This document shows, piece by piece, positions 18,802 to 41,835 of a stretch of DNA of 64,000 nucleotides. Location of the stretch: positions 124,001-188,000 of the IMG/VR virus record IMGVR_UViG_3300035698_007246, one strand, 5' to 3'. Position numbers and translations under genes: made by a program. How positions within the stretch are numbered: the first letter of the stretch is position 1; the number at the start of each line of letters is the position of its first letter. A model generated the notes under the pieces. That model was not told the origin of the DNA. It did no database searches and saw nothing but the letters and a program-made list of their open reading frames with translations.

Positions 18802-18947
18802 AAAAAGAAGTAAACAAATTGATATTACCATTTGGTAGAAAATGTAAGATTTGAACTTACACATATTGCTTTTGAGGCAATTGCTCAACCATTGAGCTTA
18901 TTTTCCGATAGGAAATTTGCTGTAATCAATCTTCATTACTTCTTTTT
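18802..18947 (-). ncRNA. clamp element C enclosing an intact tRNA
   Basis: 12-bp P1 AAAAAGAAGTAA/TTACTTCTTTTT plus clamp consensus. Confidence 0.78.
18833..18906 (-). tRNA. tRNA with CAA anticodon and short variable loop (type I)
   Basis: GGAAAAT/ATTTTCT-A-CCA; ATTGC-CTCAAAA-GCAAT; 4-nt variable loop. Confidence 0.8.
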
Positions 18948-19922: not shown

Positions 19923-20153
19923 TTATCCTATTCCATTGACGAAACGTCTTCGCCCTTTGATTGCTTTTTGTTTTTTTGTTTCAGCGTCTTCAACAACAAC
20001 TACACAGTCAGTACAAAGACCTATTTCTTTTCTTGATAAAGGAAGTATTTCTTCACATACCCCACAATAATGAACATCTTTTATCATTTTGTCATAATAT
20101 TGAATTGGTTCATTGGGTATTCCGTAAAAATTATTCATTAACATCCCTTTCAT
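19923..20153 (-). CDS. hypothetical Zn-finger protein
   Basis: CGVC...CTDC. Confidence 0.5.
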   Translation of the reverse strand: MKGMLMNNFYGIPNEPIQYYDKMIKDVHYCGVCEEILPLSRKEIGLCTDCVVVVEDAETKKQKAIKGRRRFVNGIG

Positions 20154-20191
20154 TTTTCTTTATAATTATACTAATATTTTTAAATAAATAT

Positions 20192-20262
20192 CAGGGATAT
20201 CAGGAATTGAACCCAAATTTCGTGGACCAAAACCACGTGTCTTTCCATTAGACCATATCCCT
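20192..20262 (-). tRNA. tRNA-Gln(TTG)
   Basis: AGGGATA/TATCCCT, G73, loop TTTTGGT. Confidence 0.88.
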
Positions 20263-20266
20263 ATAA

Positions 20267-20448
20267 AGGAACAAATACAAATTGAATTTGTGATTTAAAG
20301 TCTCACAGACCTGAGTTATTTAAGCTCTCCAGCTATTTGTCTCGGATTTGAACCAAGTAAAATCAGGTGTTGCCACCAGATTTGTTAACCAGTTGTAGAT
20401 ACTTGCGTATCAGCTTTGTTTGCAGTAACCAATTTTCAATTTGCCCCT
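20267..20448 (-). ncRNA. clamp element D with T-loop/elbow-like domain
   Basis: P1 AGGGGCAAAT/ATTTGTTCCT; variant clamp; CTTGG-TTCAAAT-CCGAG. Confidence 0.68.
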
Positions 20449-20463
20449 GTAATTGTATTTATA

Positions 20464-20814
20464 TTATTTCTTTTTGATTTTATCAATTAATTTTGAATTA
20501 TCTATCATTTTATAAAACATTTCTCTTAATGATTCTGGATTTTTATCAATCAGAACATCAATCGCACGTTTTATAGTTTCTGGTCTACTACATTCATTGT
20601 CGATAAAGAATTCTTTTTTCTTTTTATCAACATAGAAATTGAATTGACCAAATCCATTCCCAGCCAAACTCCAACTCAATTCCATACCAGTGAACAATTC
20701 ATTATCATATACATCAATAGAAGCTGAATTTGGACAACTATCAAAGAATTTTCTAATACCACTTCGTTGGTTGGCACTAATATTACAACCAGTAGCACCT
20801 GTATTTTTTGACAT
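20464..20814 (-). CDS. hypothetical protein
   Basis: Start trimmed to MSKNTG (AAGGA RBS). Confidence 0.55.
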   Translation of the reverse strand: MSKNTGATGCNISANQRSGIRKFFDSCPNSASIDVYDNELFTGMELSWSLAGNGFGQFNFYVDKKKKEFFIDNECSRPETIKRAIDVLIDKNPESLREMFYKMIDNSKLIDKIKKK

Positions 20815-20836
20815 TGTTATTTTTTCCTTTTGAATT

Positions 20837-20913
20837 TGGTACTGGAGGTGGGACTTGAACCCACAGCCGTACACCGTTTAAAGATGCTGCCTATACCATT
20901 AGACCACTCCAGC
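20837..20913 (-). tRNA. tRNA with TAA anticodon and short variable loop (type I)
   Basis: GCTGGAG/CTCCAGT-A-CCA; GCATC-TTTAAAC-GGTGT; no long variable arm. Confidence 0.75.
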
Positions 20914-20928
20914 ATTTATTTTTGATTT

Positions 20929-21018
20929 TGGAGCACGTGAAGGGATTCGAACCCCCATATATCTAAATGATATCCATTGGATTTGCAGTCCACAGCCTAA
21001 CCATTCGGCAACACGTGC
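20929..21018 (-). tRNA. tRNA-Cys(GCA) with long variable arm
   Basis: GCACGTG/CACGTGC, U73, CCA; variable hairpin ATATC-ATTTA-GATAT. Confidence 0.82.
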
Positions 21019-21041
21019 CTAATTAAAATAAATTAAAAATA

Positions 21042-21130
21042 AGGAAGGACAGAGATTTGAACTCTGACGACCATTTTCATGCTCTACGCTGGTTTTCAAA
21101 ACCAGTCTCTTACCATTAGATTACCCTTCC
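21042..21130 (-). tRNA. tRNA-Ser(TGA)
   Basis: Loop TTTGAAA, long variable arm; unusual U73. Confidence 0.82.
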
Positions 21131-21142
21131 ATTATCATGTAA

Positions 21143-21207
21143 GGGTAATAGGCTGGCAATCTTATGTCGCCATTTTTGACTGACGTTCCCTTCAGACCCT
21201 ATCACCC
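21143..21207 (-). ncRNA. candidate hairpin RNA
   Basis: GGGTGATAGG/CCTATTACCC stem with inner hairpin. Confidence 0.4.
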
Positions 21208-21221
21208 GCTCCTTGAATTTA

Positions 21222-21408
21222 AAAAAGAGATACACAGATTGATGTTTTTAAAGTTTATCGTGCTCTCAGCAGACTGAGCTACCTCCCTGCTTAAACATCT
21301 CTCAAGATATCTAAGCAGGGAGGGTGGGATTCCAACCCACGACCACGGCATTATCAGTGCTTTTTAAAAGTTGTATTTTGCAGAAGTCAATCTTCCGTAT
21401 CTCTTTTT
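21222..21408 (-). ncRNA. clamp element E with circularly permuted tRNA-Ile(GAT)
   Basis: 3' half 21316-21360 precedes 5' half 21259-21288; join CG|GCA gives CGGCA-CTGATAA-TGCCG. Confidence 0.82.
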
Positions 21409-21420
21409 ATGTATTTAAAA

Positions 21421-21525
21421 GTAGTCCTCAAATTGTACTTTGCTCCCTGAGCAGTTATCCCCCATCATAGACACTCCTAAGAATGCCGATGGTGGGGGAT
21501 AACGGAATCGAACCGTTGAGTTTTG
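21421..21525 (-). ncRNA. permuted tRNA-like element with internal CCA
   Basis: AACGG-TTCGATT-CCGTT-ATCCCCC-A-CCA, hairpin linker, then GGGGGAT and TGCTC-AGG-GAGCA. Confidence 0.6.
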
Positions 21526-21629
21526 TTTGCTTTAGCTTTCCACAAGTTTGATTTAGTCACACCTGCGTAGTTTGTAATCTTTTCCATTAATCAACATTTC
21601 CTTCAATTAAGTTAAAAATACTTATTTTT

Positions 21630-21794
21630 AATAGTCTTTATGGAGTGATTTACAAATTGATATTATTCGTCGCTCTGCCAACTGAGCTACCCCTGCATAT
21701 TGAGAGCAGGGGACGAGAATCGAACTCGTGACCCACGGCTTGGAATGCTAAGATTGCTGTAATCAATCTTCAAAATCACTCTATAAAGACTATT
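21630..21794 (-). ncRNA. clamp element F with circularly permuted tRNA-Gly(TCC)
   Basis: 22-nt P1; 3' half 21705-21748 precedes 5' half 21668-21696; join ACG|GC gives ACGGC-ATTCCAA-GCCGT; U73. Confidence 0.85.
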
Positions 21795-21804
21795 GTAAAC
21801 GAAT

Positions 21805-21879
21805 TGGTACTCGGTAGGGGAATCGAACCCCTGCGATGTGGTCGAAAACCACATGTCCTTGCCGTTAGACGAACCGAGC
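21805..21879 (-). tRNA. tRNA-Glu(TTC)
   Basis: Canonical, loop TTTTCGA, CCA. Confidence 0.9.
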
Positions 21880-21884
21880 ATATA

Positions 21885-21965
21885 AGGAACACAATTTGAT
21901 TTTTAGCTACCTTTGTATTTAAAACAAATGCTTTTTTTGTTTGCTGAATTCAAACTTCAGTTCCC
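21885..21965 (-). ncRNA. clamp element G (minimal)
   Basis: Compensatory TTTGA/TCAAA; insert TTTGT-TTTAAAT-ACAAA. Confidence 0.72.
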
Positions 21966-21974
21966 ATGATTTAT

Positions 21975-22003
21975 AATATAATAAATGACATTTGAAATGT
22001 CAA
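21975..22003 (-). promoter_or_regulatory. sigma70-like early promoter
   Basis: TTGACA-17-TATATT. Confidence 0.75.
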
Positions 22004-22022
22004 TAGTTATTTTCAAAAAAAT

Positions 22023-22096
22023 ACCTTTGTTCGGACTCGAACCGAAAATCTCACGCATTAAAAGTGCGTTGCTTTAGCCAATTAAGCTACAAAGGC
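22023..22096 (-). tRNA. tRNA-Lys(TTT)
   Basis: Canonical, loop CTTTTAA. Confidence 0.9.
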
Positions 22097-22102
22097 ATAT
22101 AA

Positions 22103-22308
22103 AAGGACTCAGGCTGATATATTATATGGCTGCTCATACACAGGCTCTTTCGAGTTTCTGCCAGCGAGCAGGACATCATTCTTTCGTTTGATTTACCCCA
22201 GACACCGAAATGTCCATCTTGAACAAGACCGTAGCTCACGCCTTAGATATTGTCAACTACCTTAGAACCATTATTCATATAGACTGCTGAATTCAGCCTT
22301 CTGTCCTT
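22103..22308 (-). ncRNA. clamp element H with about 165-nt structured insert
   Basis: Compensatory GGCTGA/TCAGCC; TTCG and GAAA tetraloop hairpins. Confidence 0.7.
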
Positions 22309-22356
22309 ATGAGACTTGTTTGCAAATACGTCAAGGGAATGTTCTTCGTATTAAAA

Positions 22357-22433
22357 TGGTGGAAGTGAGGGGGATTGAACCCCTGACCTTCTGGTTGCAA
22401 ACCAGACGCTCGTCCCAACTGAGCTACACCCCC
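22357..22433 (-). tRNA. tRNA-Ala(TGC)
   Basis: G3:U70, canonical, CCA. Confidence 0.93.
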
Positions 22434-22437
22434 ATAT

Positions 22438-22530
22438 AAATCGCAACTCAGATTGATGTAAAGCGGTTAAACTTTTCAATAGTTTTGGAAACCTTTTTAG
22501 ATTGCTGAAATCAATCTTCAGTTGCGATTT
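22438..22530 (-). ncRNA. clamp element I (minimal)
   Basis: P1 AAATCGCAAC/GTTGCGATTT; insert AAACT-ATTGAAA-AGTTT. Confidence 0.75.
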
Positions 22531-22611
22531 TCTTTTTCAAAGGATTCTTCAAATAATGTATTTATTAAAATGACTACTTAAAGACTAATTTATGTACCCT
22601 ATTAACTTATA

Positions 22612-22934
22612 TAACGATGATAAATTGCCCTGTTTATAATCTACTCCATCCGATAGGTGCATAGCAGCCATAGTGTGGTCGGCACTTTCTTATGATGTCC
22701 ACACCGTGTTATGATGATTGCTCATCGACTGACACCCCAATCATATCATCGCTTATGAATTTAATAGAATTTAATGATGTCAGGAATTGAACCTCACAAC
22801 AACACATCATTAAATTCTATCGGTGTTATCCATCACCCTATTGAATTTTGCCCCGCCATACATTATCCAGAATCAAGTATGCAGGAAAAACATTCCTGTG
22901 ACCATCGCTTGTACTTTACGTGTCAGCCGGGGCA
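22612..22934 (-). ncRNA. cluster of three candidate structured RNA domains
   Basis: Closed stems at 22612-22755, 22764-22820 (T-loop hairpin), 22849-22934. Confidence 0.5.
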
Positions 22935-23104
22935 TTTAATTTATTTTCTTCATTAAATTTCTTAACTTCTTTTTCATAATTTTCACGTGACATATCATTA
23001 AATACTTTTTTATCACGACCATTTATGAATTTCTTTTGCATTAATTCGAAATGTTCTTTAGATTCTCCATATGTTCTTTCATACCATTCTGGTTTTTCAG
23101 TCAA
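22916..23104 (-). CDS. hypothetical protein
   Basis: 62 aa, non-ATG start per track. Confidence 0.45.
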   Translation of the reverse strand: MTEKPEWYERTYGESKEHFELMQKKFINGRDKKVFNDMSRENYEKEVKKFNEENKLNAPADT

Positions 23105-23210
23105 TTCTCTTATAGTGAATGATGAACATACATACCAATCGTTTTTATATATTTCCGATTGTTTGTATATTTTCTAATCCGTTTTGGTAAAATATTTTAT
23201 TTATAAAAAA

Positions 23211-23294
23211 TGGTAGACGCATAGGGACTTGAACCCTAATTTTCAACAACCAATTACGAATATACTGCTTATGAGGCAGTCTCGGTATACGTCT
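23211..23294 (-). tRNA. non-canonical tRNA(CAT): no D arm, D-loop-like variable arm
   Basis: AGACGTA/TGCGTCT-A-CCA; connector TACCGAG; ACTGC-CTCATAA-GCAGT; variable TTCGTAATTGGTTGTTGAA. Confidence 0.75.
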
Positions 23295-23314
23295 ATAAAA
23301 AACAATCCAACATA

Positions 23315-23436
23315 ATAGAAAAGACATCACAGCGACTTGGCACTGCATTTGTTATAACCTACCATACCTATTAACACTCAACATTACACACAACCATAGA
23401 TACTCAAATTAAATTGTGTGTAGGATGTCTATCTAT
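23315..23436 (-). ncRNA. candidate structured RNA
   Basis: ATAGA-TAGACATC/GATGTCT-TTTCTAT closing stem; TACACACAAT/GTTGTGTGTA arm. Confidence 0.45.
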
Positions 23437-23454
23437 TACATCGAAATGAATTAT

Positions 23455-23527
23455 GTCCACCACAACGGACTCGAACCGTAATCTTTACCCCTCCACGGGG
23501 CAACATTCTAATTGAACTAACGGTGGA
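23455..23527 (-). pseudogene. atypical His-like tRNA (C73, GTG in distorted loop)
   Basis: TCCACCG/TGGTGGA-C, T arm intact, anticodon arm extended, D loop lacks GG. Confidence 0.45.
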
Positions 23528-23533
23528 TTGAAT

Positions 23534-23605
23534 TGGAGTCGCAAAACGGAGTTGAACCGTTATCTCTTACTGAAAGTAAGAATTCGAGCATTAAACTATT
23601 GCGAC
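23534..23605 (-). tRNA. atypical tRNA, probable TTC anticodon
   Basis: GTCGCAA/TTGCGAC-T-CCA; TCTTA-CTTTCAG-TAAGA; D loop lacks GG. Confidence 0.55.
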
Positions 23606-24147
23606 ATGTATTTATTTCATATTAATAAGATGGATTTATATAACCATATGGAGAATCTCTTCTGTGCGGTCTACTCTCCAGACCAGAACATTGTTATGCA
23701 TAACTCTGTTCATATTCAAGCACCATCCTTTTGAGATGATTGGGAGCACTCATATCATCATTTATTAAATCCACCTAATTAATATGAAATAAAAGAATTA
23801 TCTCTCCACAAAATGATTTCACAACCACTTCCCTCATCGGGAATAAAGGGATTGAAAATCCTAAAATTCCATATTAATGGATTGTTTGGAAACATCGTGG
23901 AACCTGTCCACCACTCGAATGAAAAGCTATTGTAACCAATATTTAAGATGGGTAACCCCACCACTTTTCTAATAAGCAGATATCTCCAAACAACCCTTAT
24001 ATAAATTCTCCCTAAGAGAGAAATTATTTTCGTTTACACATGATTTTTACATCATGTAATGTGCTTTCTTCATTACCCAAAAATGTCAAAGAACTTTATA
24101 GAGTGCGATGTCATTTGACTTTCGCTTCTCTAATTTAAGACCCCTCT

Positions 24148-24176
24148 AATATAATTAATTGTATTTGAGAAGTCAA
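24148..24176 (-). promoter_or_regulatory. sigma70-like early promoter
   Basis: TTGACT-17-TATATT; boxA-like site downstream at 24084-24094. Confidence 0.75.
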
Positions 24177-24215
24177 TAATTATTTTGAATTAATTTTCAA
24201 TTTTAAAAAAGGAAG

Positions 24216-24305
24216 GTTGTGGGAACAACCGATTTTTCAACCTATCCTGATTTACTACGCTCGTTTAGAGTTTTCAATGTAAATCAGGGTATATGCCCCC
24301 ACAAC
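24216..24305 (-). ncRNA. candidate long hairpin RNA
   Basis: GTTGTGGG/CCCACAAC and CCTGATTTAC/GTAAATCAGG stems. Confidence 0.45.
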
Positions 24306-24404
24306 AGCAATTCCACTCATAAGTAACATAAGTCACTCCTTTGTTAGAGTTTTAAAAACTGTTTATTAATCCAAAAATTTCAAAGAACTTATTTTTACAT
24401 CACT

Positions 24405-24433
24405 AATATAATTAATTGTATTGGTGATGTCAA
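24405..24433 (-). promoter_or_regulatory. sigma70-like early promoter
   Basis: TTGACA-17-TATATT; boxA-like at 24378-24388. Confidence 0.75.
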
Positions 24434-24450
24434 GACTTTATTTTTAAATT

Positions 24451-24585
24451 TATATAGCAAGGGGGACTCGAACACCCAGATAACGCCATTACCACGGAAA
24501 TCACAGCTAATCCTCGACTTTGCTTTCGCTTTCAGCACTTAACCCGCCCTCTGTGTAGGTTCACCTGTGCCAGCATTACTATATA
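24451..24585 (-). ncRNA. T-arm-containing structured RNA
   Basis: TATATAGTAA/TTGCTATATA closing stem; GTTCGAGT T loop; GC-GAAA-GC hairpin. Confidence 0.55.
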
Positions 24586-24611
24586 AATTTAAAATTTCAA
24601 AGAACAATACC

Positions 24612-24640
24612 AATATAATTAATTGTATTAGTGATGTCAA
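24612..24640 (-). promoter_or_regulatory. sigma70-like early promoter
   Basis: TTGACA-17-TATATT; boxA-like at 24595-24605. Confidence 0.75.
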
Positions 24641-24644
24641 TACT

Positions 24645-24974
24645 TTATTTCATTTTTATTTTATTTCTGATAAGAAGCTCACATAATTTATTTCTTAATT
24701 CCTGAATCTGAATCCTATCAAGTTTTTCTTCTGTATAAAATGTCATTGTTGTTTCATGAACAATATTTATTGCAGCCATATCTCGTTGTTGTTGTTGTTG
24801 TTGTTGTTGTTTCACTAACACTGTATTATATTTACAACCACGAAACCTACTATAAAAACAACACCCATCCAAATTTCTTTTACTAAGGCTTTTGTTTTTA
24901 CATTTATCAAATACAGTTAAAGGACATTCCTTTAATTCTGTACCAACAAATATTCTTTTAATATATTTAAACAT
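24645..24974 (-). CDS. hypothetical protein with poly-Gln tract
   Basis: (CAA)8 run at about 24785-24811. Confidence 0.55.
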   Translation of the reverse strand: MFKYIKRIFVGTELKECPLTVFDKCKNKSLSKRNLDGCCFYSRFRGCKYNTVLVKQQQQQQQQRDMAAINIVHETTMTFYTEEKLDRIQIQELRNKLCELLIRNKIKMK

Positions 24975-24991: not shown

Positions 24992-25090
24992 TGTTGGCTG
25001 ATAGATTTGAACTATCATCTGCACCTTTAACGATGCTATCATCCTTAAGGATAAGACACCTTGTCATGTTACTAATTACACCAAGCCAAC
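24992..25090 (-). ncRNA. tRNA-like RNA with extra hairpins
   Basis: GTTGGCT/AGCCAAC acceptor, D and T arms, three internal hairpins. Confidence 0.55.
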
Positions 25091-25185: not shown

Positions 25186-25251
25186 TGGGGTGACCGAGGA
25201 GGCTCGACAGGAACCACAATCCTGTGTTCTACCAGTTGAACTACAGTCACC
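25186..25251 (-). tRNA. T-armless tRNA-His(GTG)
   Basis: G-1, C73, CCA, perfect D and anticodon arms; only TCGAGCCTCCT between anticodon and acceptor stems. Confidence 0.65.
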
Positions 25252-25824: not shown

Positions 25825-26319
25825 TTATTTTTCTACATCACCTAAATTTTCAAAGAACTTTTTTGCATATTTATTAACATCATCTAAAATATGTGTCCTA
25901 TACCTGCTATGCCAATAACTATGATGTGTTGGACATAATGGTATTAAATTTTCTGGTTTATTATTTTTACTATCACCATCATAATGATGAACTTCAACAA
26001 TTTTATCTTCATCACAAATAATACATTTCTTTTTATGATAAACAAAACATGTTGTTCGATATGCACAATCTTTCCAATTTGGATGATTAGTACCAGTTCT
26101 AAAATATGTGTTTGCACAACCACAAGAACATGTTGTGCCAGTTTTAAAATTTTTAATTGGTTTATTACAAACCGGACATAATTTTAAATTTTTTGGATTT
26201 AAATAACAACTCTCTTCATGTCTTGATAAATTAGCAACAACCCGCTCCTCTTTACACCATCGACATTTTTGTTTTTTAGTACTTCCAAGTTTTAAATTTT
26301 GTAATGAATTGCTATGCAT
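25825..26319 (-). CDS. HNH homing endonuclease
   Basis: KKCIICDE..IVEVHHYDG...NLIPLCPTHH. Confidence 0.88.
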   Translation of the reverse strand: MHSNSLQNLKLGSTKKQKCRWCKEERVVANLSRHEESCYLNPKNLKLCPVCNKPIKNFKTGTTCSCGCANTYFRTGTNHPNWKDCAYRTTCFVYHKKKCIICDEDKIVEVHHYDGDSKNNKPENLIPLCPTHHSYWHSRYRTHILDDVNKYAKKFFENLGDVEK

Positions 26320-38163: not shown

Positions 38164-41100
38164 TTAAGCCCCACATCCAGAATATCCACAATCATTACAA
38201 ACAAAACATCCACTTTGCATAGCAATACTATCACTTTTACATGTAGGACATATCATTCCGACTATTGTTGTACCATTATCAATTGTTTCAGATACAAATT
38301 TTCTAATTGCAGTTAATAATGTTGATACATTGTCGCCTTCAATACCTTGTAATGAAACAAGAATATCTTGTCGTGCTATGTTATGTCTCAAACAAAGACT
38401 AACCATTCTACCCAATCTATTTGCATTAGTATCACCAAGGCATTTGTCCCAGGTGTCTTCTACAATCTTAACACTAATTCCACAGTCAATAGCAAGCACA
38501 CATAAACTTTTACAAGCCTTAGTACATGCTCTTGTATCATTTTTAGAATTTGTGTTAATCCACAGTGCCATTGGATACTTCATATCAACATCATCAGGGA
38601 AGTAACTGAAATTAATGTAGAATTTCATCCCTTCACGTTTAATCGTCCTTGTAGGGCCGTTAATGAAGGTCTCAGGGAGTTTTACGCCCTTCTTTATGAT
38701 AGTTTTTTCCTCTTCAGCACTTTCAATCTTAGAAAGAACGGATTCCATAGAACCTGTACGGTATGTTGTTACACCAATGAGTCCTTTTTTCCATGCTTCA
38801 AAATATAATTCTTTAAATTTTTCAAATGAATATTTATTTGGTAAATTTATTGTTTTCGAAACAGACTGATTACAGTAATATTGAACTACTTCTTGAATGT
38901 TAAGATGGTCTTCAATTTCCAAATCATCTGTTGTGACCAAGAAATCAGCTTTCTTATGTTCTGGATAATTTTCAAGAATCCAAGCATAACCATAATCACA
39001 AAGCGTATACATTTCACACAAACCTCTATTATGCGGTTCGTAGTAATATTTTGTTCCTTCATAGTATCCCTCCCAGTAAGTAAAATCCTTTTTCTTTTTT
39101 TCTTTAAGGATTGTTTTTACATTATCGGAATTCATGCCTTCAGGAAAAGCACATATCACTTTTCTCTCAGATTTCAAATCAAACACAGGTTCAATTCCAT
39201 TTGATACATTATCACACACCACAGATGAATTACCTAATGGTGGATTGGTTGTGGTTTTAGCATTTCTGAGACCATATTGTTTAATTAATTCTTTTGTTTC
39301 ATCTGTTAATCTATCAGATTTGAAATAAGGTGTCTGACTAAATAAATCATAATTGTATAATGGGAATGACCCTTTTTCTTTAGCCAATAATGCACTTGAT
39401 TGCATTGTAATGTTTTCCTTAAGTTGTTTAATTTTTTTAGTAAACGTAACAGCTTCTTGTGAGTTATATTTAATACCCAACATAACCAATGTAGAACCTA
39501 ATCCATTAATACCCATACCAAACTGTCTTAGATTTTCTACAGCCCATGCATATGATGGTAATGGCAATTCAGTCAAATCACACACATTATCTAACATTCT
39601 TGAGTATGTAACGATGTCTTTTTTATACAATTCCAAATTAAAGTATGGAACATCATTACGGATTTCTACATACATTGTCAAATTAAGTGAACCTAATAGA
39701 CACACAGTAGACATTATTGGATTACCTGGTATCTCACCACATCCTCGACTCACATACCCTTCGGTATTCCAATCATCAGCAGTTGGTTCATGCAAATCAT
39801 AAACATCACCAAATCCAAGAAATTCAATTTCTTTTATTTTAGTTTTCCACTTATTTCCTGTTAATGATGTAGTTTTGATAATTTGTTTTAATTTTTCATT
39901 TTTTTCATCATGACTAAGTTTATGTACAAATTTATAAAAATTTAAAATTGAATCATTATCAATAACACCTTCAAAGATATCATGCCGCCTCACAACATCA
40001 CGTCCATATATTTTTGCTGTCTCACCTTTTTTACCACACAAATATTTCTTATAATCACACCCTGCGGTAAGCATTATATGTTTTACCAATAAATGTAATT
40101 TTTCTGATATATTTTTAAATCTAACTTGTGGATATCGAGAAGTTAAATTCACATTCCCATCAGATGAAATTAACCCATCTATCAATCCAGATAAAAAATC
40201 ATCATTAAAGTTTAACAATTTCATAACATCAAAATTGGATTTATCATTAGCATCAATACCGAAAACATCAAATAATAGTTTAATCTTCCCTTCGGTATTT
40301 ATAGCATAATATCTCTCACAATTTCCATCAGATTTATCGATTCTATAATCAAAACCAAACCTGTTATACAATTCAATTATATAATCATTATTTTCATTTG
40401 AATCTGTTGATATATTAAAGTTTTTATAATTAGAAAAACATCCATCTCCAAAATATAATCCAAATAACATTCCAACATCTCTGATGTCGAATAGTTGCTC
40501 GCCATTTATAGCATCAACAGATATTACGCCATTATCCACACATGATGGATTATACTTAATCATATCATAAGGTTGTTTTCTTACGTTATCACCAACATTT
40601 AAATATTTTAAACGTGTGTTATTGTCCCACCGTTTTCTATTTTCTGATGTTCCATTTTGAGTATGAAAAATATGACCTTCAGTTACACCCTGATAAAACC
40701 CATCTGTGAAATGAACTCTATAAATTGGCTGATTTTCATGAACTTCTATATTATCAACACTACCATGCCCTAACGTTGTTTGAATTTCTTCACCGACTTT
40801 TACATCTTCAACTCGTTTTAGTCCGTGTTTAGTAGCTACTAATGTTCCTTTTACAACACAAGGATTTGTAGCATTACATTCACCCAAATAGAGAATTGGG
40901 TTGTTTTTATTCATGTTATCAACGAATACTATACCCGGTTCAGAGCGATTGTATGTAGATTTCATAATAAGGTCGTAAAGTTTCTTAGCTTTCACACGTT
41001 TTACTACTTTACCATTCCATATTAAGTCCCACATAGCATTATCAGCAACAGCATTCATGAAATCATCACTCACTGCAACACTCATGTTGAATTTAGTTAG

Positions 41101-41835
41101 CTTACCAGACTCTTGTTTTGCTCTAATGAACTCTTCAATGTCAGGGTGCCATACAGAAAGACATCCCATCATAGCACCTTTACGTATATCTTTATCACAT
41201 TCACCAAAATATTCTTTAAGCTCTTCAACAGAAGCATAGTTTTTTAATGAATCAAGGTATCCATCATTGTCACCTTTAACAATACAGTCAGAAACCTTGT
41301 CCCAAATCTCCATATAAGAGATAACTCCGGGGTGTCTAACACCAGTTCCTTTGATTAAACTACCACGAGGTCGTATAAAGTCAAAGTTTATTCCATACCC
41401 ACCCTCGGAAGCAAGAGTTTTTGCTTGTTCCATGATAGATAAGAAGATGTTTACGAGTTCATCTGGTGTATCAGGTGTAGTGATTATTATTTCATTCTTG
41501 AAATGTTCATTCTGTCTTATGTATTTTATAATGGCATTACTAACAGGACCATTAATAAAACAGTTCATTAGTGTAGCATTGTAATAATCAGTTCCTATAT
41601 TGGTTGTAATTCTACCACCCGGTGAACATTTAATACCTAATGGATTCCCCATACTATCAAAACGTATCATTGTTTCAAGAAAAATGGGATACCAATATTC
41701 AGAATCTACTTCATTATTAGCAAGTGCCCTTGCTATTCTTTCAAATGTCCCAAGGGGGGTCTCACCATCATACTGATATTTTCCCTTCCAATTATTATAT
41801 GCAATTTTCGTTTTGAAAAAGTTTTCATCACGCAT
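38164..41835 (-). CDS. nrdJ: class II (B12-dependent) ribonucleotide reductase with intein
   Basis: PGGR, NCF, GGYG.NF..IRPRG, GAMM, NP|CGE, SNGIEP, QSVSKTIN, C-terminal Zn ribbon. Confidence 0.92.
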   Translation of the reverse strand: MRDENFFKTKIAYNNWKGKYQYDGETPLGTFERIARALANNEVDSEYWYPIFLETMIRFDSMGNPLGIKCSPGGRITTNIGTDYYNATLMNCFINGPVSNAIIKYIRQNEHFKNEIIITTPDTPDELVNIFLSIMEQAKTLASEGGYGINFDFIRPRGSLIKGTGVRHPGVISYMEIWDKVSDCIVKGDNDGYLDSLKNYASVEELKEYFGECDKDIRKGAMMGCLSVWHPDIEEFIRAKQESGKLTKFNMSVAVSDDFMNAVADNAMWDLIWNGKVVKRVKAKKLYDLIMKSTYNRSEPGIVFVDNMNKNNPILYLGECNATNPCVVKGTLVATKHGLKRVEDVKVGEEIQTTLGHGSVDNIEVHENQPIYRVHFTDGFYQGVTEGHIFHTQNGTSENRKRWDNNTRLKYLNVGDNVRKQPYDMIKYNPSCVDNGVISVDAINGEQLFDIRDVGMLFGLYFGDGCFSNYKNFNISTDSNENNDYIIELYNRFGFDYRIDKSDGNCERYYAINTEGKIKLLFDVFGIDANDKSNFDVMKLLNFNDDFLSGLIDGLISSDGNVNLTSRYPQVRFKNISEKLHLLVKHIMLTAGCDYKKYLCGKKGETAKIYGRDVVRRHDIFEGVIDNDSILNFYKFVHKLSHDEKNEKLKQIIKTTSLTGNKWKTKIKEIEFLGFGDVYDLHEPTADDWNTEGYVSRGCGEIPGNPIMSTVCLLGSLNLTMYVEIRNDVPYFNLELYKKDIVTYSRMLDNVCDLTELPLPSYAWAVENLRQFGMGINGLGSTLVMLGIKYNSQEAVTFTKKIKQLKENITMQSSALLAKEKGSFPLYNYDLFSQTPYFKSDRLTDETKELIKQYGLRNAKTTTNPPLGNSSVVCDNVSNGIEPVFDLKSERKVICAFPEGMNSDNVKTILKEKKKKDFTYWEGYYEGTKYYYEPHNRGLCEMYTLCDYGYAWILENYPEHKKADFLVTTDDLEIEDHLNIQEVVQYYCNQSVSKTINLPNKYSFEKFKELYFEAWKKGLIGVTTYRTGSMESVLSKIESAEEEKTIIKKGVKLPETFINGPTRTIKREGMKFYINFSYFPDDVDMKYPMALWINTNSKNDTRACTKACKSLCVLAIDCGISVKIVEDTWDKCLGDTNANRLGRMVSLCLRHNIARQDILVSLQGIEGDNVSTLLTAIRKFVSETIDNGTTIVGMICPTCKSDSIAMQSGCFVCNDCGYSGCGA
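39742..40860 (-). mobile_element. LAGLIDADG intein in nrdJ (373 aa) ending in Gly
   Basis: Starts CVVKGTLV after NP; LIDGLISSDG; ends YVSRG before CGE. Confidence 0.85.

What the first reader, a model, noticed from the sequence alone, without database searches (positions are those of the whole stretch)
21630..21794. Circularly permuted tRNA-Gly(UCC) gene inside clamp F
In transcript order the 3' half (GC-ATTCCAA-GCCGT-GGGTC-ACGAG-TTCGATT-CTCGT-CCCCTGC-T) comes first. An 8-nt linker follows, then the 5' half (GCAGGGG-TA-GCTC-AGTTGGCA-GAGC-G-ACG). Joining ACG|GC (positions 29/30) gives a fully paired tRNA-Gly with U73, the bacterial Gly determinant. Permuted tRNA genes are known from red and green algae and some archaea, where BHB processing is used. 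I know of no such case in a bacteriophage, and no BHB motif is evident here. Standard tRNA finders would miss it.
Basis: partly seen in the sequence, partly recalled or inferred. Interest (0 to 1): 0.92.

Follow-up and report, generated by a model that had tools for sequence, protein, structure and literature searches.

The report
Phage Y-RNA-like permuted tRNA mimic
The sequence really is a complete tRNA written in circularly permuted order, but it is most likely not a tRNA gene: it belongs to a large, unannotated family of phage tRNA-shaped RNAs carrying a conserved handle that travels with a phage Ro60-like RNA-binding protein, that is, a phage Y RNA.

Summary
Observation confirmed. On the minus strand, 21794-21630 holds a 22-bp terminal clamp enclosing anticodon hairpin, T arm, loop-capped 7-bp acceptor and D arm. 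Rejoining at 29|30 gives an ARAGORN-accepted tRNA-Gly(UCC).

Interpretation not supported. The element is one of at least six units in the window that share a module: a stem followed by single-stranded AC-N-GCAA. I found 161 non-redundant units in other phages, 49 permuted and 112 standard-order tRNAs carrying the module as a 40-49-nt insertion at the same anticodon-stem position.

In 77 protein-anchored loci, ACAGCAA occurs 127 times in the 500 nt upstream of a DUF2828 gene on the gene's strand and 0 times on the other strand. This phage encodes that protein 385 nt beyond the window edge. Its model matches Ro60 structures over full length.

Against a decoding role:
- The units' anticodons show no avoidance of ordinary tRNAs, whereas ordinary tRNAs do avoid each other.
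- About 40% lack a canonical anticodon arm.
- Many acceptors are capped by 3-6-nt loops or continuous helices.

The layout parallels YrlA and phage Yrl RNAs (stem + CGAA), with a different motif and sub-threshold Rfam scores. Verdict: a new variant of the Y-RNA tRNA-mimic class. Function is inferred, not shown.

The parts
21773..21794 (-). Element A, outer clamp 5' strand (AAUAGUCUUUAU-A-GAGUGAUUU)
   Evidence: Inverted repeat I7; paired in the MFE and centroid folds.
21762..21768 (-). Element A, inner stem 5' strand GAUUGAU, which pairs with AUCAAUU at 21655-21661
   Evidence: Read from the sequence. The equivalent stem covaries across the family: 44 of 49 permuted units have at least 6 bp, against 25.8 +/- 3.2 when shuffled, with 40 distinct sequences. 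A local hairpin (21770-21750) predicted competes with it.
21754..21760 (-). Conserved single-stranded handle motif ACAGCAA (family consensus AC-N-GCAA followed by a U-rich tract)
   Evidence: It occurs 127 times in the 500 nt upstream of Ro60-like genes on the gene's strand and 0 times on the other strand. About 66 of 68 insertion-bearing tRNAs found without using the motif carry it.
21738..21748 (-). Anticodon-like mini-hairpin GC-AUUCCAA-GC (tRNA positions 30-40; U33, UCC, A37)
   Evidence: The same kind of hairpin with a YU-NNN-RA loop recurs in about 60% of family members.
21735..21737 (-). CGU (positions 41-43), pairing long-range with ACG at 21668-21670 (positions 27-29)
   Evidence: All three pairs form in 73 of 161 units, against 22.9 +/- 3.9 when shuffled, with more than 25 pair combinations.
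21713..21734 (-). Variable loop GGGUC plus T arm ACGAG-UUCGAUU-CUCGU
21690..21712 (-). Acceptor-like 7-bp stem CCCCUGC/GCAGGGG capped by the 9-nt loop UCUCAAUAU
21668..21689 (-). UA + D arm GCUC-AGUUGGCA-GAGC + G + ACG
21630..21667 (-). 3' linker AAUAAU, inner stem 3' strand AUCAAUU, UGU, then outer clamp 3' strand
21226..21404 (-). Element 1, a permuted paralogue. It has clamp AGAGAUAC/GUAUCUCU, inner stem AGAUUGA/UCAAUCU, motif UCUGCAA, hairpin GCA-CUGAUAA-UGC, a T arm, a 19-bp continuous acceptor hairpin and a D arm.
   Evidence: YrlA 30.7 bits; rejoins to tRNA-Ile gat.
21425..21555 (-). Element 2, a probable third tandem member. It has a T arm plus a long acceptor hairpin containing ...CCACCA, resembling the tRNA-like domain of a two-piece tmRNA. 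Its motif variant is AAAGCAA, and there is no room for a tag reading frame.
   Evidence: (beta_tmRNA 40.1 bits, tmRNA_permuted 27.2 bits, both below gathering).
18807..18942 (-). Module unit W6: the stem (GAAGUAA..GAUUGAU / AUCAAUU..UUACUUC) plus ACAGCAA clamps the leader and trailer of an otherwise ordinary tRNA (18833-18906, anticodon CAA, encoded CCA)
17283..17600 (-). Module unit W4: a permuted unit whose acceptor is extended by the roughly 170-nt I18 hairpin
   Evidence: The parse is by eye and less certain.
17117..17260 (-). Module unit W5: a permuted unit with no anticodon hairpin and an atypical D arm, so YrlA-like in the strict sense

Best explanation
Element A is a phage Y-RNA-like non-coding RNA of the YrlA type: a tRNA mimic, not a tRNA gene.

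Shown by sequence and comparison:
- It is built from two parts. The first is a handle: terminal clamp, 7-bp inner stem and single-stranded ACAGCAA. The second is a complete tRNA-shaped domain whose acceptor end is closed by a loop.
- In the tRNA-shaped domain, the chain enters and leaves through the 5' strand of the anticodon stem.
- The same handle occurs in many phages in three topologies. In the permuted form, as here, the stem strands are the 5' and 3' ends of the RNA. In the second form it is a closed hairpin inserted at 28/29-29/30 of a standard-order tRNA. In the third it clamps the leader and trailer of an ordinary tRNA.
- The handle tracks genes for a DUF2828-type Ro60 homologue, and this phage encodes one.

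Inferred:
- The RNA is transcribed with the minus-strand tRNA array.
- It is released by cleavage in or near the clamp.
- It folds into an L shape.
- The Ro60-like protein binds it through the stem + AC-N-GCAA, the counterpart of the stem + CGAA site of known Y RNAs.
- The tRNA-shaped part then engages a host protein that recognises the tRNA body and anticodon arm but does not need a free CCA end. Candidates are an anticodon nuclease or another tRNA-directed defence or processing factor.
- It would act either as a decoy or as a tether that brings that factor, or an exonuclease such as PNPase, to the Ro60-like protein.
- The likely role is protection of phage translation or counter-defence.
For: Anatomy. 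Rfam's only non-tRNA hit on the element is YrlA, aligned over the closing stem, T arm, AS and D arm (36.7 bits).

Family size and shape:
- 161 non-redundant units, 49 permuted and 112 standard-order, with the break or insertion at the same position.
- The closing helix and the inner stem both covary.

Linkage to the protein:
- RNA-anchored: units lie 60-700 nt from, and on the same strand as, a TROVE+vWA_Ro60 or a DUF2828+DUF7788 gene.
- Protein-anchored and unbiased: ACAGCAA counts are 127, 48 and 35 in successive 500-nt bins upstream and 41 downstream on the gene's strand, against 0-4 on the other strand. 70 of 77 loci have at least one copy.

This phage:
- L321 is 100% identical to window 1-3310.
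- It carries a DUF2828+DUF7788 gene 385 nt beyond the window edge, on the array's strand.
- It also carries RtcB.

The protein is Ro60-like:
- It falls in phrog_850 together with bona fide TROVE proteins.
- hhalign gives 94.8% probability over the vWA domain.
- The AlphaFold model has pLDDT 88.5, and its top seven PDB matches are all Ro60/Rsr over full length.

Cultured phages have the same RNAs beside the gene: Felix O1 and mycobacteriophage Rumpelstiltskin, whose gene is annotated 'Ro-like RNA binding protein'.

The units do not behave as decoders.

Literature:
- YrlA architecture, and RNase P/CCA processing of the M. smegmatis form (PMC4201824).
- Phage phiLo Ro60 binds Yrl RNAs through a stem + CGAA and engages host PNPase (PMC12135203).
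- Bas63 Ro60-like gp130, upstream of tRNA genes, counters the ppl defence (PMC11482910).
Against: - No binding, expression or processing data exist for this RNA or this protein.
- In this phage the Ro60-like gene is about 22 kb from the element rather than adjacent, and no module RNA lies directly beside it.
- The canonical Ro60-binding motif GNCGAAN0-1G is absent.
- The Rfam YrlA score is about half the gathering score (36.7 against 69).
- Canonical 7-nt anticodon loops with many different anticodons are not obviously needed by a Ro60 tether.
- Standard-order members have open, processable acceptor ends, and unit W6 encloses what looks like a normal tRNA. The handle could therefore act on genuine tRNA precursors rather than define a separate class of mimics.
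- The host-side partner is pure inference.
Confidence: 0.68

Rival explanations
1. This is the reader's model: a true permuted tRNA-Gly(UCC) gene. The handle is an intron-like segment. An endonuclease cuts before position 30 and after position 29, a ligase joins the ends into a circle, and RNase P plus 3' trimming and CCA addition open the acceptor loop to give a working tRNA. Standard-order members would be spliced in the same way.
For: - The rejoined sequence is a flawless cloverleaf with a canonical anticodon loop.
- The 7-bp acceptor plus 9-nt loop resembles M. smegmatis YrlA, which RNase P cuts and which receives CCA in vivo (PMC4201824).
- The same phage encodes an RtcB ligase.
- The permuted and insertion forms share one break position, as expected if a single splicing activity served both.
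- Element 1 carries GAU, an anticodon that the 27 ARAGORN tRNAs of the window lack.
Against: - A normal tRNA-Gly(UCC) is already present at 6477-6549.
- At the family level there is no avoidance of anticodon redundancy, unlike ordinary tRNAs.
- About 40% of units lack a canonical anticodon arm.
- Some acceptors are capped by 3-4-nt loops or continuous helices.
- The distance from the motif to the junction varies from 5 to about 25 nt, so the motif cannot position a cut.
- No BHB is present, and no splicing-endonuclease family turned up in the proteins scanned.
- The handle also encloses short non-tRNA cargo in Felix O1 and Rumpelstiltskin, which an intron would not do.
Confidence: 0.08
2. A two-piece, possibly chargeable mimic. 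RNase P and 3' processing open the acceptor loop of element A but nothing is ligated. The clamp and acceptor helix hold the two pieces together, as in two-piece tmRNA, giving a CCA-ended tRNA-like RNP component.
For: - The 7-bp acceptor with a 9-nt loop and a U at position 73 is the feature that makes M. smegmatis YrlA an RNase P and CCA-adding substrate (PMC4201824).
- The neighbouring element 2 encodes ...CCACCA and resembles the processed region of two-piece tmRNA.
Against: This is not a general property of the family: 15 of 49 caps are 6 nt or shorter, and some acceptors are long continuous helices. S. Typhimurium YrlA is not cleaved (PMC4201824). There is no direct evidence either way for element A.
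Confidence: 0.14
3. The module is only a processing or stability signal for the long tRNA-array transcript, for example an RNase III or RNase E site or a protective clamp. Its linkage to the Ro60-like gene would then merely reflect both living in tRNA arrays.
For: The 22-bp clamp with one mismatch looks like an RNase III substrate. Unit W6 clamps an ordinary pre-tRNA. Other clamp-enclosed RNAs without the motif occur in the same array.
Against: - ACAGCAA is essentially invariant from actinophages to enterobacterial phages to this phage, while the stems vary freely. That pattern indicates a sequence-specific reader rather than a generic nuclease site.
- In Rumpelstiltskin the module RNAs directly follow the Ro-like gene, and no tRNA gene is annotated or detected in the 6.4-kb region.
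- The strand-specific pile-up within 500 nt of the gene (127 against 0) is far stronger than general co-residence in arrays would give.
Confidence: 0.1

Closest known systems
YrlA / bacterial Y RNAs (Rfam RF02553; Chen et al. 2014, PMC4201824; structure preprint 10.1101/312249)
   Same: - A terminal 5'/3' stem.
- A conserved single-stranded motif just inside the stem.
- A T arm, a loop-capped acceptor stem-loop (AS) and a D arm in permuted order.
- A fourth stem-loop upstream of T.
- The gene is linked to a Ro60 homologue and, in Salmonella as in this phage, to RtcB.
- Reported in phages as well as bacteria.
   Different: - The motif is AC-N-GCAA, not GNCGAAN0-1G.
- The protein partner is the DUF2828 subfamily rather than Pfam TROVE.
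- Rfam scores are 31-39 bits against a gathering score of 69.
- The fourth stem-loop, called 'V' in YrlA, is here a true anticodon-arm equivalent. It has a 7-nt YU-NNN-RA loop and stacks on a 2-3-bp closing helix, so the whole cloverleaf is present.
- The same handle also occurs as an insertion in standard-order tRNAs and as a leader/trailer clamp.
Yrl1/Yrl2 of Thermus phage phiLo with phiRo60 (PMC12135203; PDB 9L5Y)
   Same: Phage-encoded RNAs beside a phage Ro60 gene, with a 5'-3' stem flanking a short motif that is needed for binding. A counter-defence role by hijacking PNPase has been proposed. The phiLo Ro60 structure is among the top matches to this phage's protein.
   Different: The phiLo RNAs use CGAA and are not described there as tRNA-shaped. 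Binding has been demonstrated for phiLo but not here.
Circularly permuted tRNA genes of Cyanidioschyzon and other algae and some archaea
   Same: The 3' half precedes the 5' half, a short linker joins the acceptor ends, and rejoining gives a full cloverleaf.
   Different: Those genes have a BHB at the junction, are processed by the splicing endonuclease and ligase through a circle, and supply otherwise missing tRNAs. Here there is no BHB, no such enzyme was detected, the anticodon is redundant, and the flanks form a conserved protein-linked handle.
Two-piece (permuted) tmRNA (Rfam RF01850, RF04321)
   Same: A permuted tRNA-like domain with T arm and acceptor. Element 2 even encodes CCACCA and matches the inter-piece region of the model.
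   Different: There is no pseudoknot or tag reading frame. This comparison applies only to the neighbouring element 2, not to the finding itself.

Membership tests
Circularly permuted tRNA gene (algal/archaeal type) | The 3' half lies upstream of the 5' half, and rejoining restores a complete cloverleaf | tested here: met
   ARAGORN calls the rejoined sequence tRNA-Gly(tcc) and makes no call on the native order.
Circularly permuted tRNA gene (algal/archaeal type) | A bulge-helix-bulge motif at the junction of the transcript's termini | tested here: not met
   By inspection of the sequence and folds. The junction is flanked by A/U-rich single strands (UCUUA| and |AAUAAU) leading into the inner stem. 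There is no 4-bp helix between two 3-nt bulges.
Circularly permuted tRNA gene (algal/archaeal type) | A splicing endonuclease and a ligase are available | tested here: inconclusive
   RtcB is encoded in the same phage. No tRNA-intron endonuclease family appeared in the 30 proteins scanned. Most small ORFs and about 150 kb of the genome were not scanned.
Circularly permuted tRNA gene (algal/archaeal type) | The product serves decoding, that is, it supplies a needed anticodon | tested here: not met
   An ordinary tRNA-Gly(UCC) lies at 6477-6549. At family level, redundancy is 19 of 98 against 20.0 +/- 3.2 by chance, while ordinary tRNAs show 70 of 600 against 183 +/- 12.
YrlA-type Y RNA | A tRNA-like domain with T arm, loop-capped acceptor stem and D arm, closed by a helix at the anticodon-stem position | tested here: met
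   The cmscan alignment to RF02553 covers model positions 23-88; see also the folds.
YrlA-type Y RNA | The 5' and 3' ends pair in a long terminal stem | tested here: met
   The inner stem covaries across the family.
YrlA-type Y RNA | Encoded with a Ro60 orthologue | tested here: met
   The gene is in the same genome and on the same strand, though about 22 kb away. The protein is confirmed as a Ro60 fold. In relatives the RNAs lie within 500 nt of the gene.
YrlA-type Y RNA | The GNCGAAN0-1G (CGAA) motif near the 5' end | tested here: not met
   Absent from element A. The equivalent position carries ACAGCAA, which is conserved across the family.
YrlA-type Y RNA | Reaches the Rfam RF02553 gathering score | tested here: not met
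   36.7 bits against 69. Relatives score 33-39 bits or are not detected at all.
YrlA-type Y RNA | Physically bound by the Ro60 protein | not testable with these tools
   This needs RIP/CLIP or EMSA.
Two-piece tmRNA (considered for the neighbouring element 2 only) | A tag reading frame and pseudoknots downstream of the 5' acceptor strand | tested here: not met
   Only about 40 nt separate it from the next element. ARAGORN finds no tmRNA. Rfam scores are below gathering.

The most novel reading that the evidence does not exclude
The handle-bearing RNAs are genuine tRNA precursors, and phages possess a protein-guided tRNA splicing and permutation pathway that does not use a BHB. In this reading the Ro60-like protein recognises the stem + AC-N-GCAA module. 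A nuclease and RtcB excise the module from standard-order pre-tRNAs. They also circularise permuted ones such as element A, which RNase P and CCA addition then open. This would be the first permuted or split tRNA maturation system outside archaea and eukaryotes.
Probability: 0.07. Interest if true: 0.95.

Novelty: new variant of a known kind. Interest (0 to 1): 0.62.

Why it matters
Ro60-like genes sit in or beside the tRNA arrays of hundreds of cultured phages, including Felix O1-like coliphages and phages of Mycobacterium, Listeria, Staphylococcus, Vibrio and Campylobacter. One of them, Bas63 gp130, is already known to defeat a bacterial defence system. Their RNA partners are unannotated.

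This finding leads to a simple, searchable signature: a stem followed by AC-N-GCAA. It marks those RNAs and shows that many are whole tRNAs, anticodon arm included, presented in three topologies.

That has three practical consequences:
- It gives a concrete, testable RNA component for phage Ro60 biology in laboratory phage-host pairs.
- It explains a class of odd tRNA calls in phage genomes: over-long 'tRNAs' and spurious small ORFs laid over these RNAs.
- It suggests that the less-conserved 'V' stem-loop of YrlA may be a vestigial anticodon arm.

It also warns against annotating such elements as permuted tRNA genes.

Tried and rejected
- Megablast of 20000-24000 against cultured phages found nothing. 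The polymerase is only about 30-33% identical to cyanomyovirus polymerases, so no close annotated relative could be used.
- blastn of the element against phages gave only two partial tRNA-like hits.
- The first collection scan (T-loop, gap, D-arm) returned mostly tandem tRNAs and needed a structural filter.
- A literature search containing the word 'TROVE' was swamped by the ordinary word.
- 'DUF2828' returned only unrelated plant and tardigrade papers.
- The Burroughs & Aravind RNA-repair paper and the 2020 Ro60 review are not held, and the supplements of Chen et al. 2014 are not held. I therefore cannot say which phage YrlAs they listed.
- One anchor protein was not on record.
- A loose motif-plus-stem scan of the window was too noisy in this AT-rich genome. 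I kept only hits sharing the exact 20-nt box.
- The 'UGU' tail after the inner stem is seen in the window's units and some others, but my automatic parse recovered it in only 7 of 44 units. Felix O1 has GGU and Rumpelstiltskin AGU, so I do not claim it as conserved.
- I considered a tmRNA-style resume codon at the GCA of ACAGCAA and a T4 MotA-box or promoter reading of the motif. I rejected both because the reading frame runs through the tRNA-like domain and because the adjoining stems covary at the RNA level.
- No self-cleaving ribozyme or other Rfam family matched the flanks at E up to 10.
- I did not build a covariance model. Family statistics come from my own positional parses with shuffled controls.
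Full report
**1. What is there**

The window is part of a 31% GC, distantly T4-like jumbo phage. It encodes a clamp loader, PolB, a UvsX-like protein, gp46/47-like proteins and an intein-containing ribonucleotide reductase. ARAGORN finds 27 tRNA genes, all on the minus strand between 1.8 and 26.6 kb.

The finding lies in that array, also on the minus strand. Reading 21794 to 21630, the parts in order are:
- a clamp strand (21794-21773);
- UGAA, then GAUUGAU, U, ACAGCAA and UCUUA;
- GC-AUUCCAA-GC, CGU and GGGUC;
- the T arm ACGAG-UUCGAUU-CUCGU;
- CCCCUGC and the 9-nt loop UCUCAAUAU, then GCAGGGG;
- UA, the D arm GCUC-AGUUGGCA-GAGC, G and ACG;
- AAUAAU, AUCAAUU and UGU;
- the second clamp strand (21651-21630).

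The clamp arms are inverted repeat I7. The region folds far better than shuffles (z = -6.4). Joining ...ACG to GC... gives a 73-nt sequence that ARAGORN accepts as tRNA-Gly(tcc), with every stem fully paired. The native order gives no call.

**2. It is not alone in the window**

About 390 nt downstream, 21404-21226 has the same plan. It rejoins to tRNA-Ile(gat), but its acceptor is a continuous 19-bp hairpin.

Between the two, about 21555-21425 holds a T arm plus a long acceptor hairpin containing CCACCA. It matches the inter-piece region of two-piece tmRNA models at sub-threshold scores.

The two rejoined sequences resemble each other much more than either resembles any of the phage's own AT-rich tRNAs. 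They share the D arm and the anticodon stem ACGGC(A)/(U)GCCGU. The real tRNA-Gly(UCC) at 6477-6549 is unrelated.

Three further units start with the same 20-nt box UGAAGAUUGAWUACAGCAA:
- 17600-17283 is permuted, with the acceptor extended by a hairpin of about 170 nt.
- 17260-17117 is permuted, with no anticodon hairpin.
- 18942-18807 has the stem clamping the leader and trailer of an ordinary tRNA.

**3. Rfam's only lead**

Apart from tRNA, the only family that aligns to the element is YrlA (RF02553). It covers the closing helix, T arm, capped acceptor and D arm, at 36.7 bits against a gathering score of 69.

YrlA RNAs are bacterial and phage Y RNAs. They have a terminal stem with a GNCGAAN0-1G motif that is thought to bind the Ro60 orthologue Rsr, plus a permuted tRNA-like domain (T, AS, D, and a less-conserved 'V' stem-loop upstream of T). 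They are encoded next to rsr. The M. smegmatis form has a 7-bp acceptor, is cut by RNase P and receives CCA (PMC4201824).

**4. A family in other phages**

They gave dozens of elements with the same order of parts:
- an inner stem of free sequence, for example GGAAAC/GUUUCC or GGAUAC/GUAUCC;
- single-stranded (U)ACAGCAA and an A/U linker;
- a 2-5-bp hairpin with a 7-nt YU-NNN-RA loop;
- a 2-3-nt closing strand, V loop, T arm, capped acceptor, D arm and closing strand;
- a linker and the 3' strand of the inner stem.

All sit in phage tRNA or tmRNA arrays. They score 33-39 bits on YrlA.

**5. The protein partner**

I clustered ORFs in these loci. The commonest neighbour is a 480-600-aa protein with Pfam DUF2828 + DUF7788 and a weak Ro60-type vWA hit. 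Three loci whose elements lack the ACAGCAA motif have a bona fide TROVE + vWA_Ro60 gene instead. Where both are present, the RNA lies 60-700 nt from the gene on the same strand.

PHROGs places both protein types in phrog_850 'RNA-binding protein'. A profile-profile comparison gives 94.8% probability over the vWA domain.

Those loci had been selected by RNA pattern, so I repeated the test starting from the protein. At least 511 viral contigs encode a relative, and the best 80 were fetched. In the 77 non-redundant loci, ACAGCAA counts on the gene's strand were:
- 127 in the 500 nt immediately upstream;
- 48 and 35 in the next two bins;
- 41 in the 500 nt downstream.

The other strand had 0-4 per bin. 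70 of 77 loci have at least one copy within 1.5 kb, and 16 have six or more.

**6. This phage has the protein**

No ORF in the window matches either protein HMM. The window is positions 124001-188000 of a 223,879-bp IMG/VR contig. An independent 67.6-kb assembly, L321, is 100% identical to window 1-3310. It continues into a 485-aa DUF2828 + DUF7788 gene that starts 385 nt beyond window position 1, on the array's strand, with an RtcB ligase gene about 8 kb further on.

An AlphaFold model of this protein is confident (pLDDT 88.5, pTM 0.89). Its top seven PDB matches are all Ro60/Rsr, from Xenopus, human, D. radiodurans and Thermus phage phiLo. They align over the full length with probability 1.00 and TM 0.56-0.61.

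**7. The permuted form is one of several topologies**

Just upstream of the Ro60-like genes, Rfam reports tRNAs of 114-143 nt. The alignments and sequence show standard-order tRNAs with open acceptor ends. They carry a 40-49-nt insertion in the 5' strand of the anticodon stem. The insertion is a closed 6-8-bp hairpin, 1-3 nt, ACAGCAA and a linker. An example is L242:3586-3702, a tRNA-Asn(GUU) with the insertion at 28/29.

Element A is the exact circular permutation of this design. The insertion hairpin is opened into the 5'/3' clamp, and the acceptor is closed by a loop.

In all I collected 161 non-redundant units, 112 standard-order and 49 permuted. The break or insertion is mostly at 28/29 or 29/30 in both. 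A search that did not use the motif found that about 66 of 68 genuine insertion-bearing tRNAs beside Ro60-like genes carry AC[A/U/C]GCAA followed by a U-rich tract.

Both long-range helices covary:
- The 27-29:41-43 closing helix forms fully in 73 of 161 units, against 22.9 +/- 3.9 when shuffled, with more than 25 pair combinations.
- The inner stem has at least 6 bp in 44 of 49 permuted units, against 25.8 +/- 3.2 when shuffled, with 40 distinct sequences.

**8. tRNA gene or mimic?**

Four observations argue against a decoding role:
- **Redundancy.** Within a locus, ordinary tRNAs strongly avoid repeating an anticodon: 70 of 600 share one, against 183 +/- 12 expected. Module-bearing units show no avoidance of the ordinary set: 19 of 98, against 20.0 +/- 3.2.
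- **Anticodon arms.** Only about 60% of units keep a canonical arm.
- **Closed acceptors.** Among permuted units, 15 of 49 acceptor caps are 6 nt or shorter, and some acceptors are long continuous helices.
- **Non-tRNA cargo.** The handle also encloses short cargo with no tRNA-like part in Felix O1 and mycobacteriophage Rumpelstiltskin.

Some observations point the other way:
- The anticodon loops that are canonical are very tRNA-like.
- Standard-order members have processable ends.
- The phage has RtcB.
- Element A itself is flawless and has the 7-bp acceptor that allows RNase P cleavage in M. smegmatis YrlA.

I therefore keep the permuted-precursor reading at about 0.08 and a two-piece processed form at about 0.14.

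**9. Cultured phages and the literature**

The protein is encoded in 693 cultured-phage records.

In Felix O1, four unannotated module RNAs (AGAAGACC-N3-4-ACAGCAA ... GGUCU-GGU) lie in the tRNA array just downstream of ORF86. One encloses a permuted T/acceptor/D domain.

In Rumpelstiltskin, three tandem module RNAs directly follow gp54 'Ro-like RNA binding protein'. The middle one is a permuted tRNA-Asn(GUU)-like unit with the same architecture as element A. Rfam detects none of them.

Published work shows three relevant things:
- The Ro60-like gp130 of coliphage Bas63 sits directly upstream of tRNA genes and counters the ppl defence. Its authors speculate that some annotated tRNAs may be Y RNAs (PMC11482910).
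- Salmonella Rsr-YrlA is co-operonic with RtcB and responds to tRNA damage (PMC7790460, seen through only).

In the library I could search, I found no description of the AC-N-GCAA handle, of handle-inserted standard-order tRNAs, or of the anticodon-arm reading of the fourth stem-loop. The supplements of the 2014 paper and two reviews were not available, so part of this may already be recorded.

**10. Verdict**

The interpretation as a functional permuted tRNA-Gly gene is not supported.

The element is best described as a YrlA-class, Y-RNA-like tRNA mimic. It carries a variant handle for a DUF2828-type Ro60 homologue that this phage encodes. What the ribonucleoprotein does is inferred from analogy, not shown; a decoy or tether for a tRNA-recognising host factor is the most likely role.

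Noticed in passing
window 9485-9560 (-): ARAGORN calls a tRNA with anticodon CUA ('Pyl'), that is, an amber-suppressor-type tRNA in the phage array. This may indicate TAG read-through or recoding in this phage or its host.
   Followed up: no
window 23611-23793, 24394-24640 (nested 24442-24594), 22599-22767, 23872-24003, 24139-24431 (-): Several other structured RNAs of about 120-250 nt are enclosed by long terminal inverted repeats ('clamps') in the same array. They have strongly negative folding energies, no AC-N-GCAA motif and no Rfam match. Their nature is unknown.
   Followed up: partly
window 21425-21555 (-): A tRNA-like domain resembling the acceptor/T-arm region of two-piece (permuted) tmRNA, with encoded CCACCA buried in a long hairpin. 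There is no tag reading frame or pseudoknots (beta_tmRNA 40.1 bits against a gathering score of 84).
   Followed up: partly
window 24992-25090, 23214-23294, 25189-25250 (-): Rfam tRNA hits that ARAGORN missed: a 99-nt hit with an insertion of about 25 nt, an 81-nt hit, and a 62-nt truncated-looking tRNA. None carries the handle motif.
   Followed up: no
window 38164-41835 (-): A ribonucleotide reductase large subunit interrupted by an intein (LAGLIDADG_3 and Hint hits inside the barrel domain).
   Followed up: no
window 14599-16711 (-): A Mom-family protein and an R2K-clade ATP-grasp protein are encoded side by side inside the tRNA array. Several HNH endonuclease genes are interspersed among the tRNAs (841-1440, 5808-6527, 25825-26319).
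   Followed up: no
L321 11699-12789 (about 8.4 kb left of window position 1, window minus strand): An RtcB RNA ligase gene lies in the same phage, downstream of the Ro60-like gene. This echoes the rsr-yrlA-rtcBA arrangement of Salmonella.
   Followed up: partly
L325 (Salmonella phage Felix O1, AF320576.1 about 23870-24760): The module RNAs are unannotated, and the record instead carries small ORFs of unknown function (for example ORF91, ORF92 and ORF94) overlapping the RNA genes. A 'pseudo' tRNA-Tyr is annotated there as well.
   Followed up: partly
L054, L075, L112 (viral contigs): Permuted tRNA-like elements lie 66-103 nt upstream of bona fide TROVE+vWA_Ro60 genes. They lack the ACAGCAA motif, but two of them also have an anticodon-like hairpin (CGC-CUUGGGA-GCG and CC-AUGCUAA-GG). 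The anticodon-arm feature is therefore not confined to the DUF2828 subfamily.
   Followed up: partly
Family-wide: The anticodon-like loops are skewed towards GUU (19 of 98), UGU (11) and GUC (7). This could reflect related phages in the sample or a preference for mimicking Asn, Thr and Asp tRNAs. I did not correct for phylogeny.
   Followed up: no
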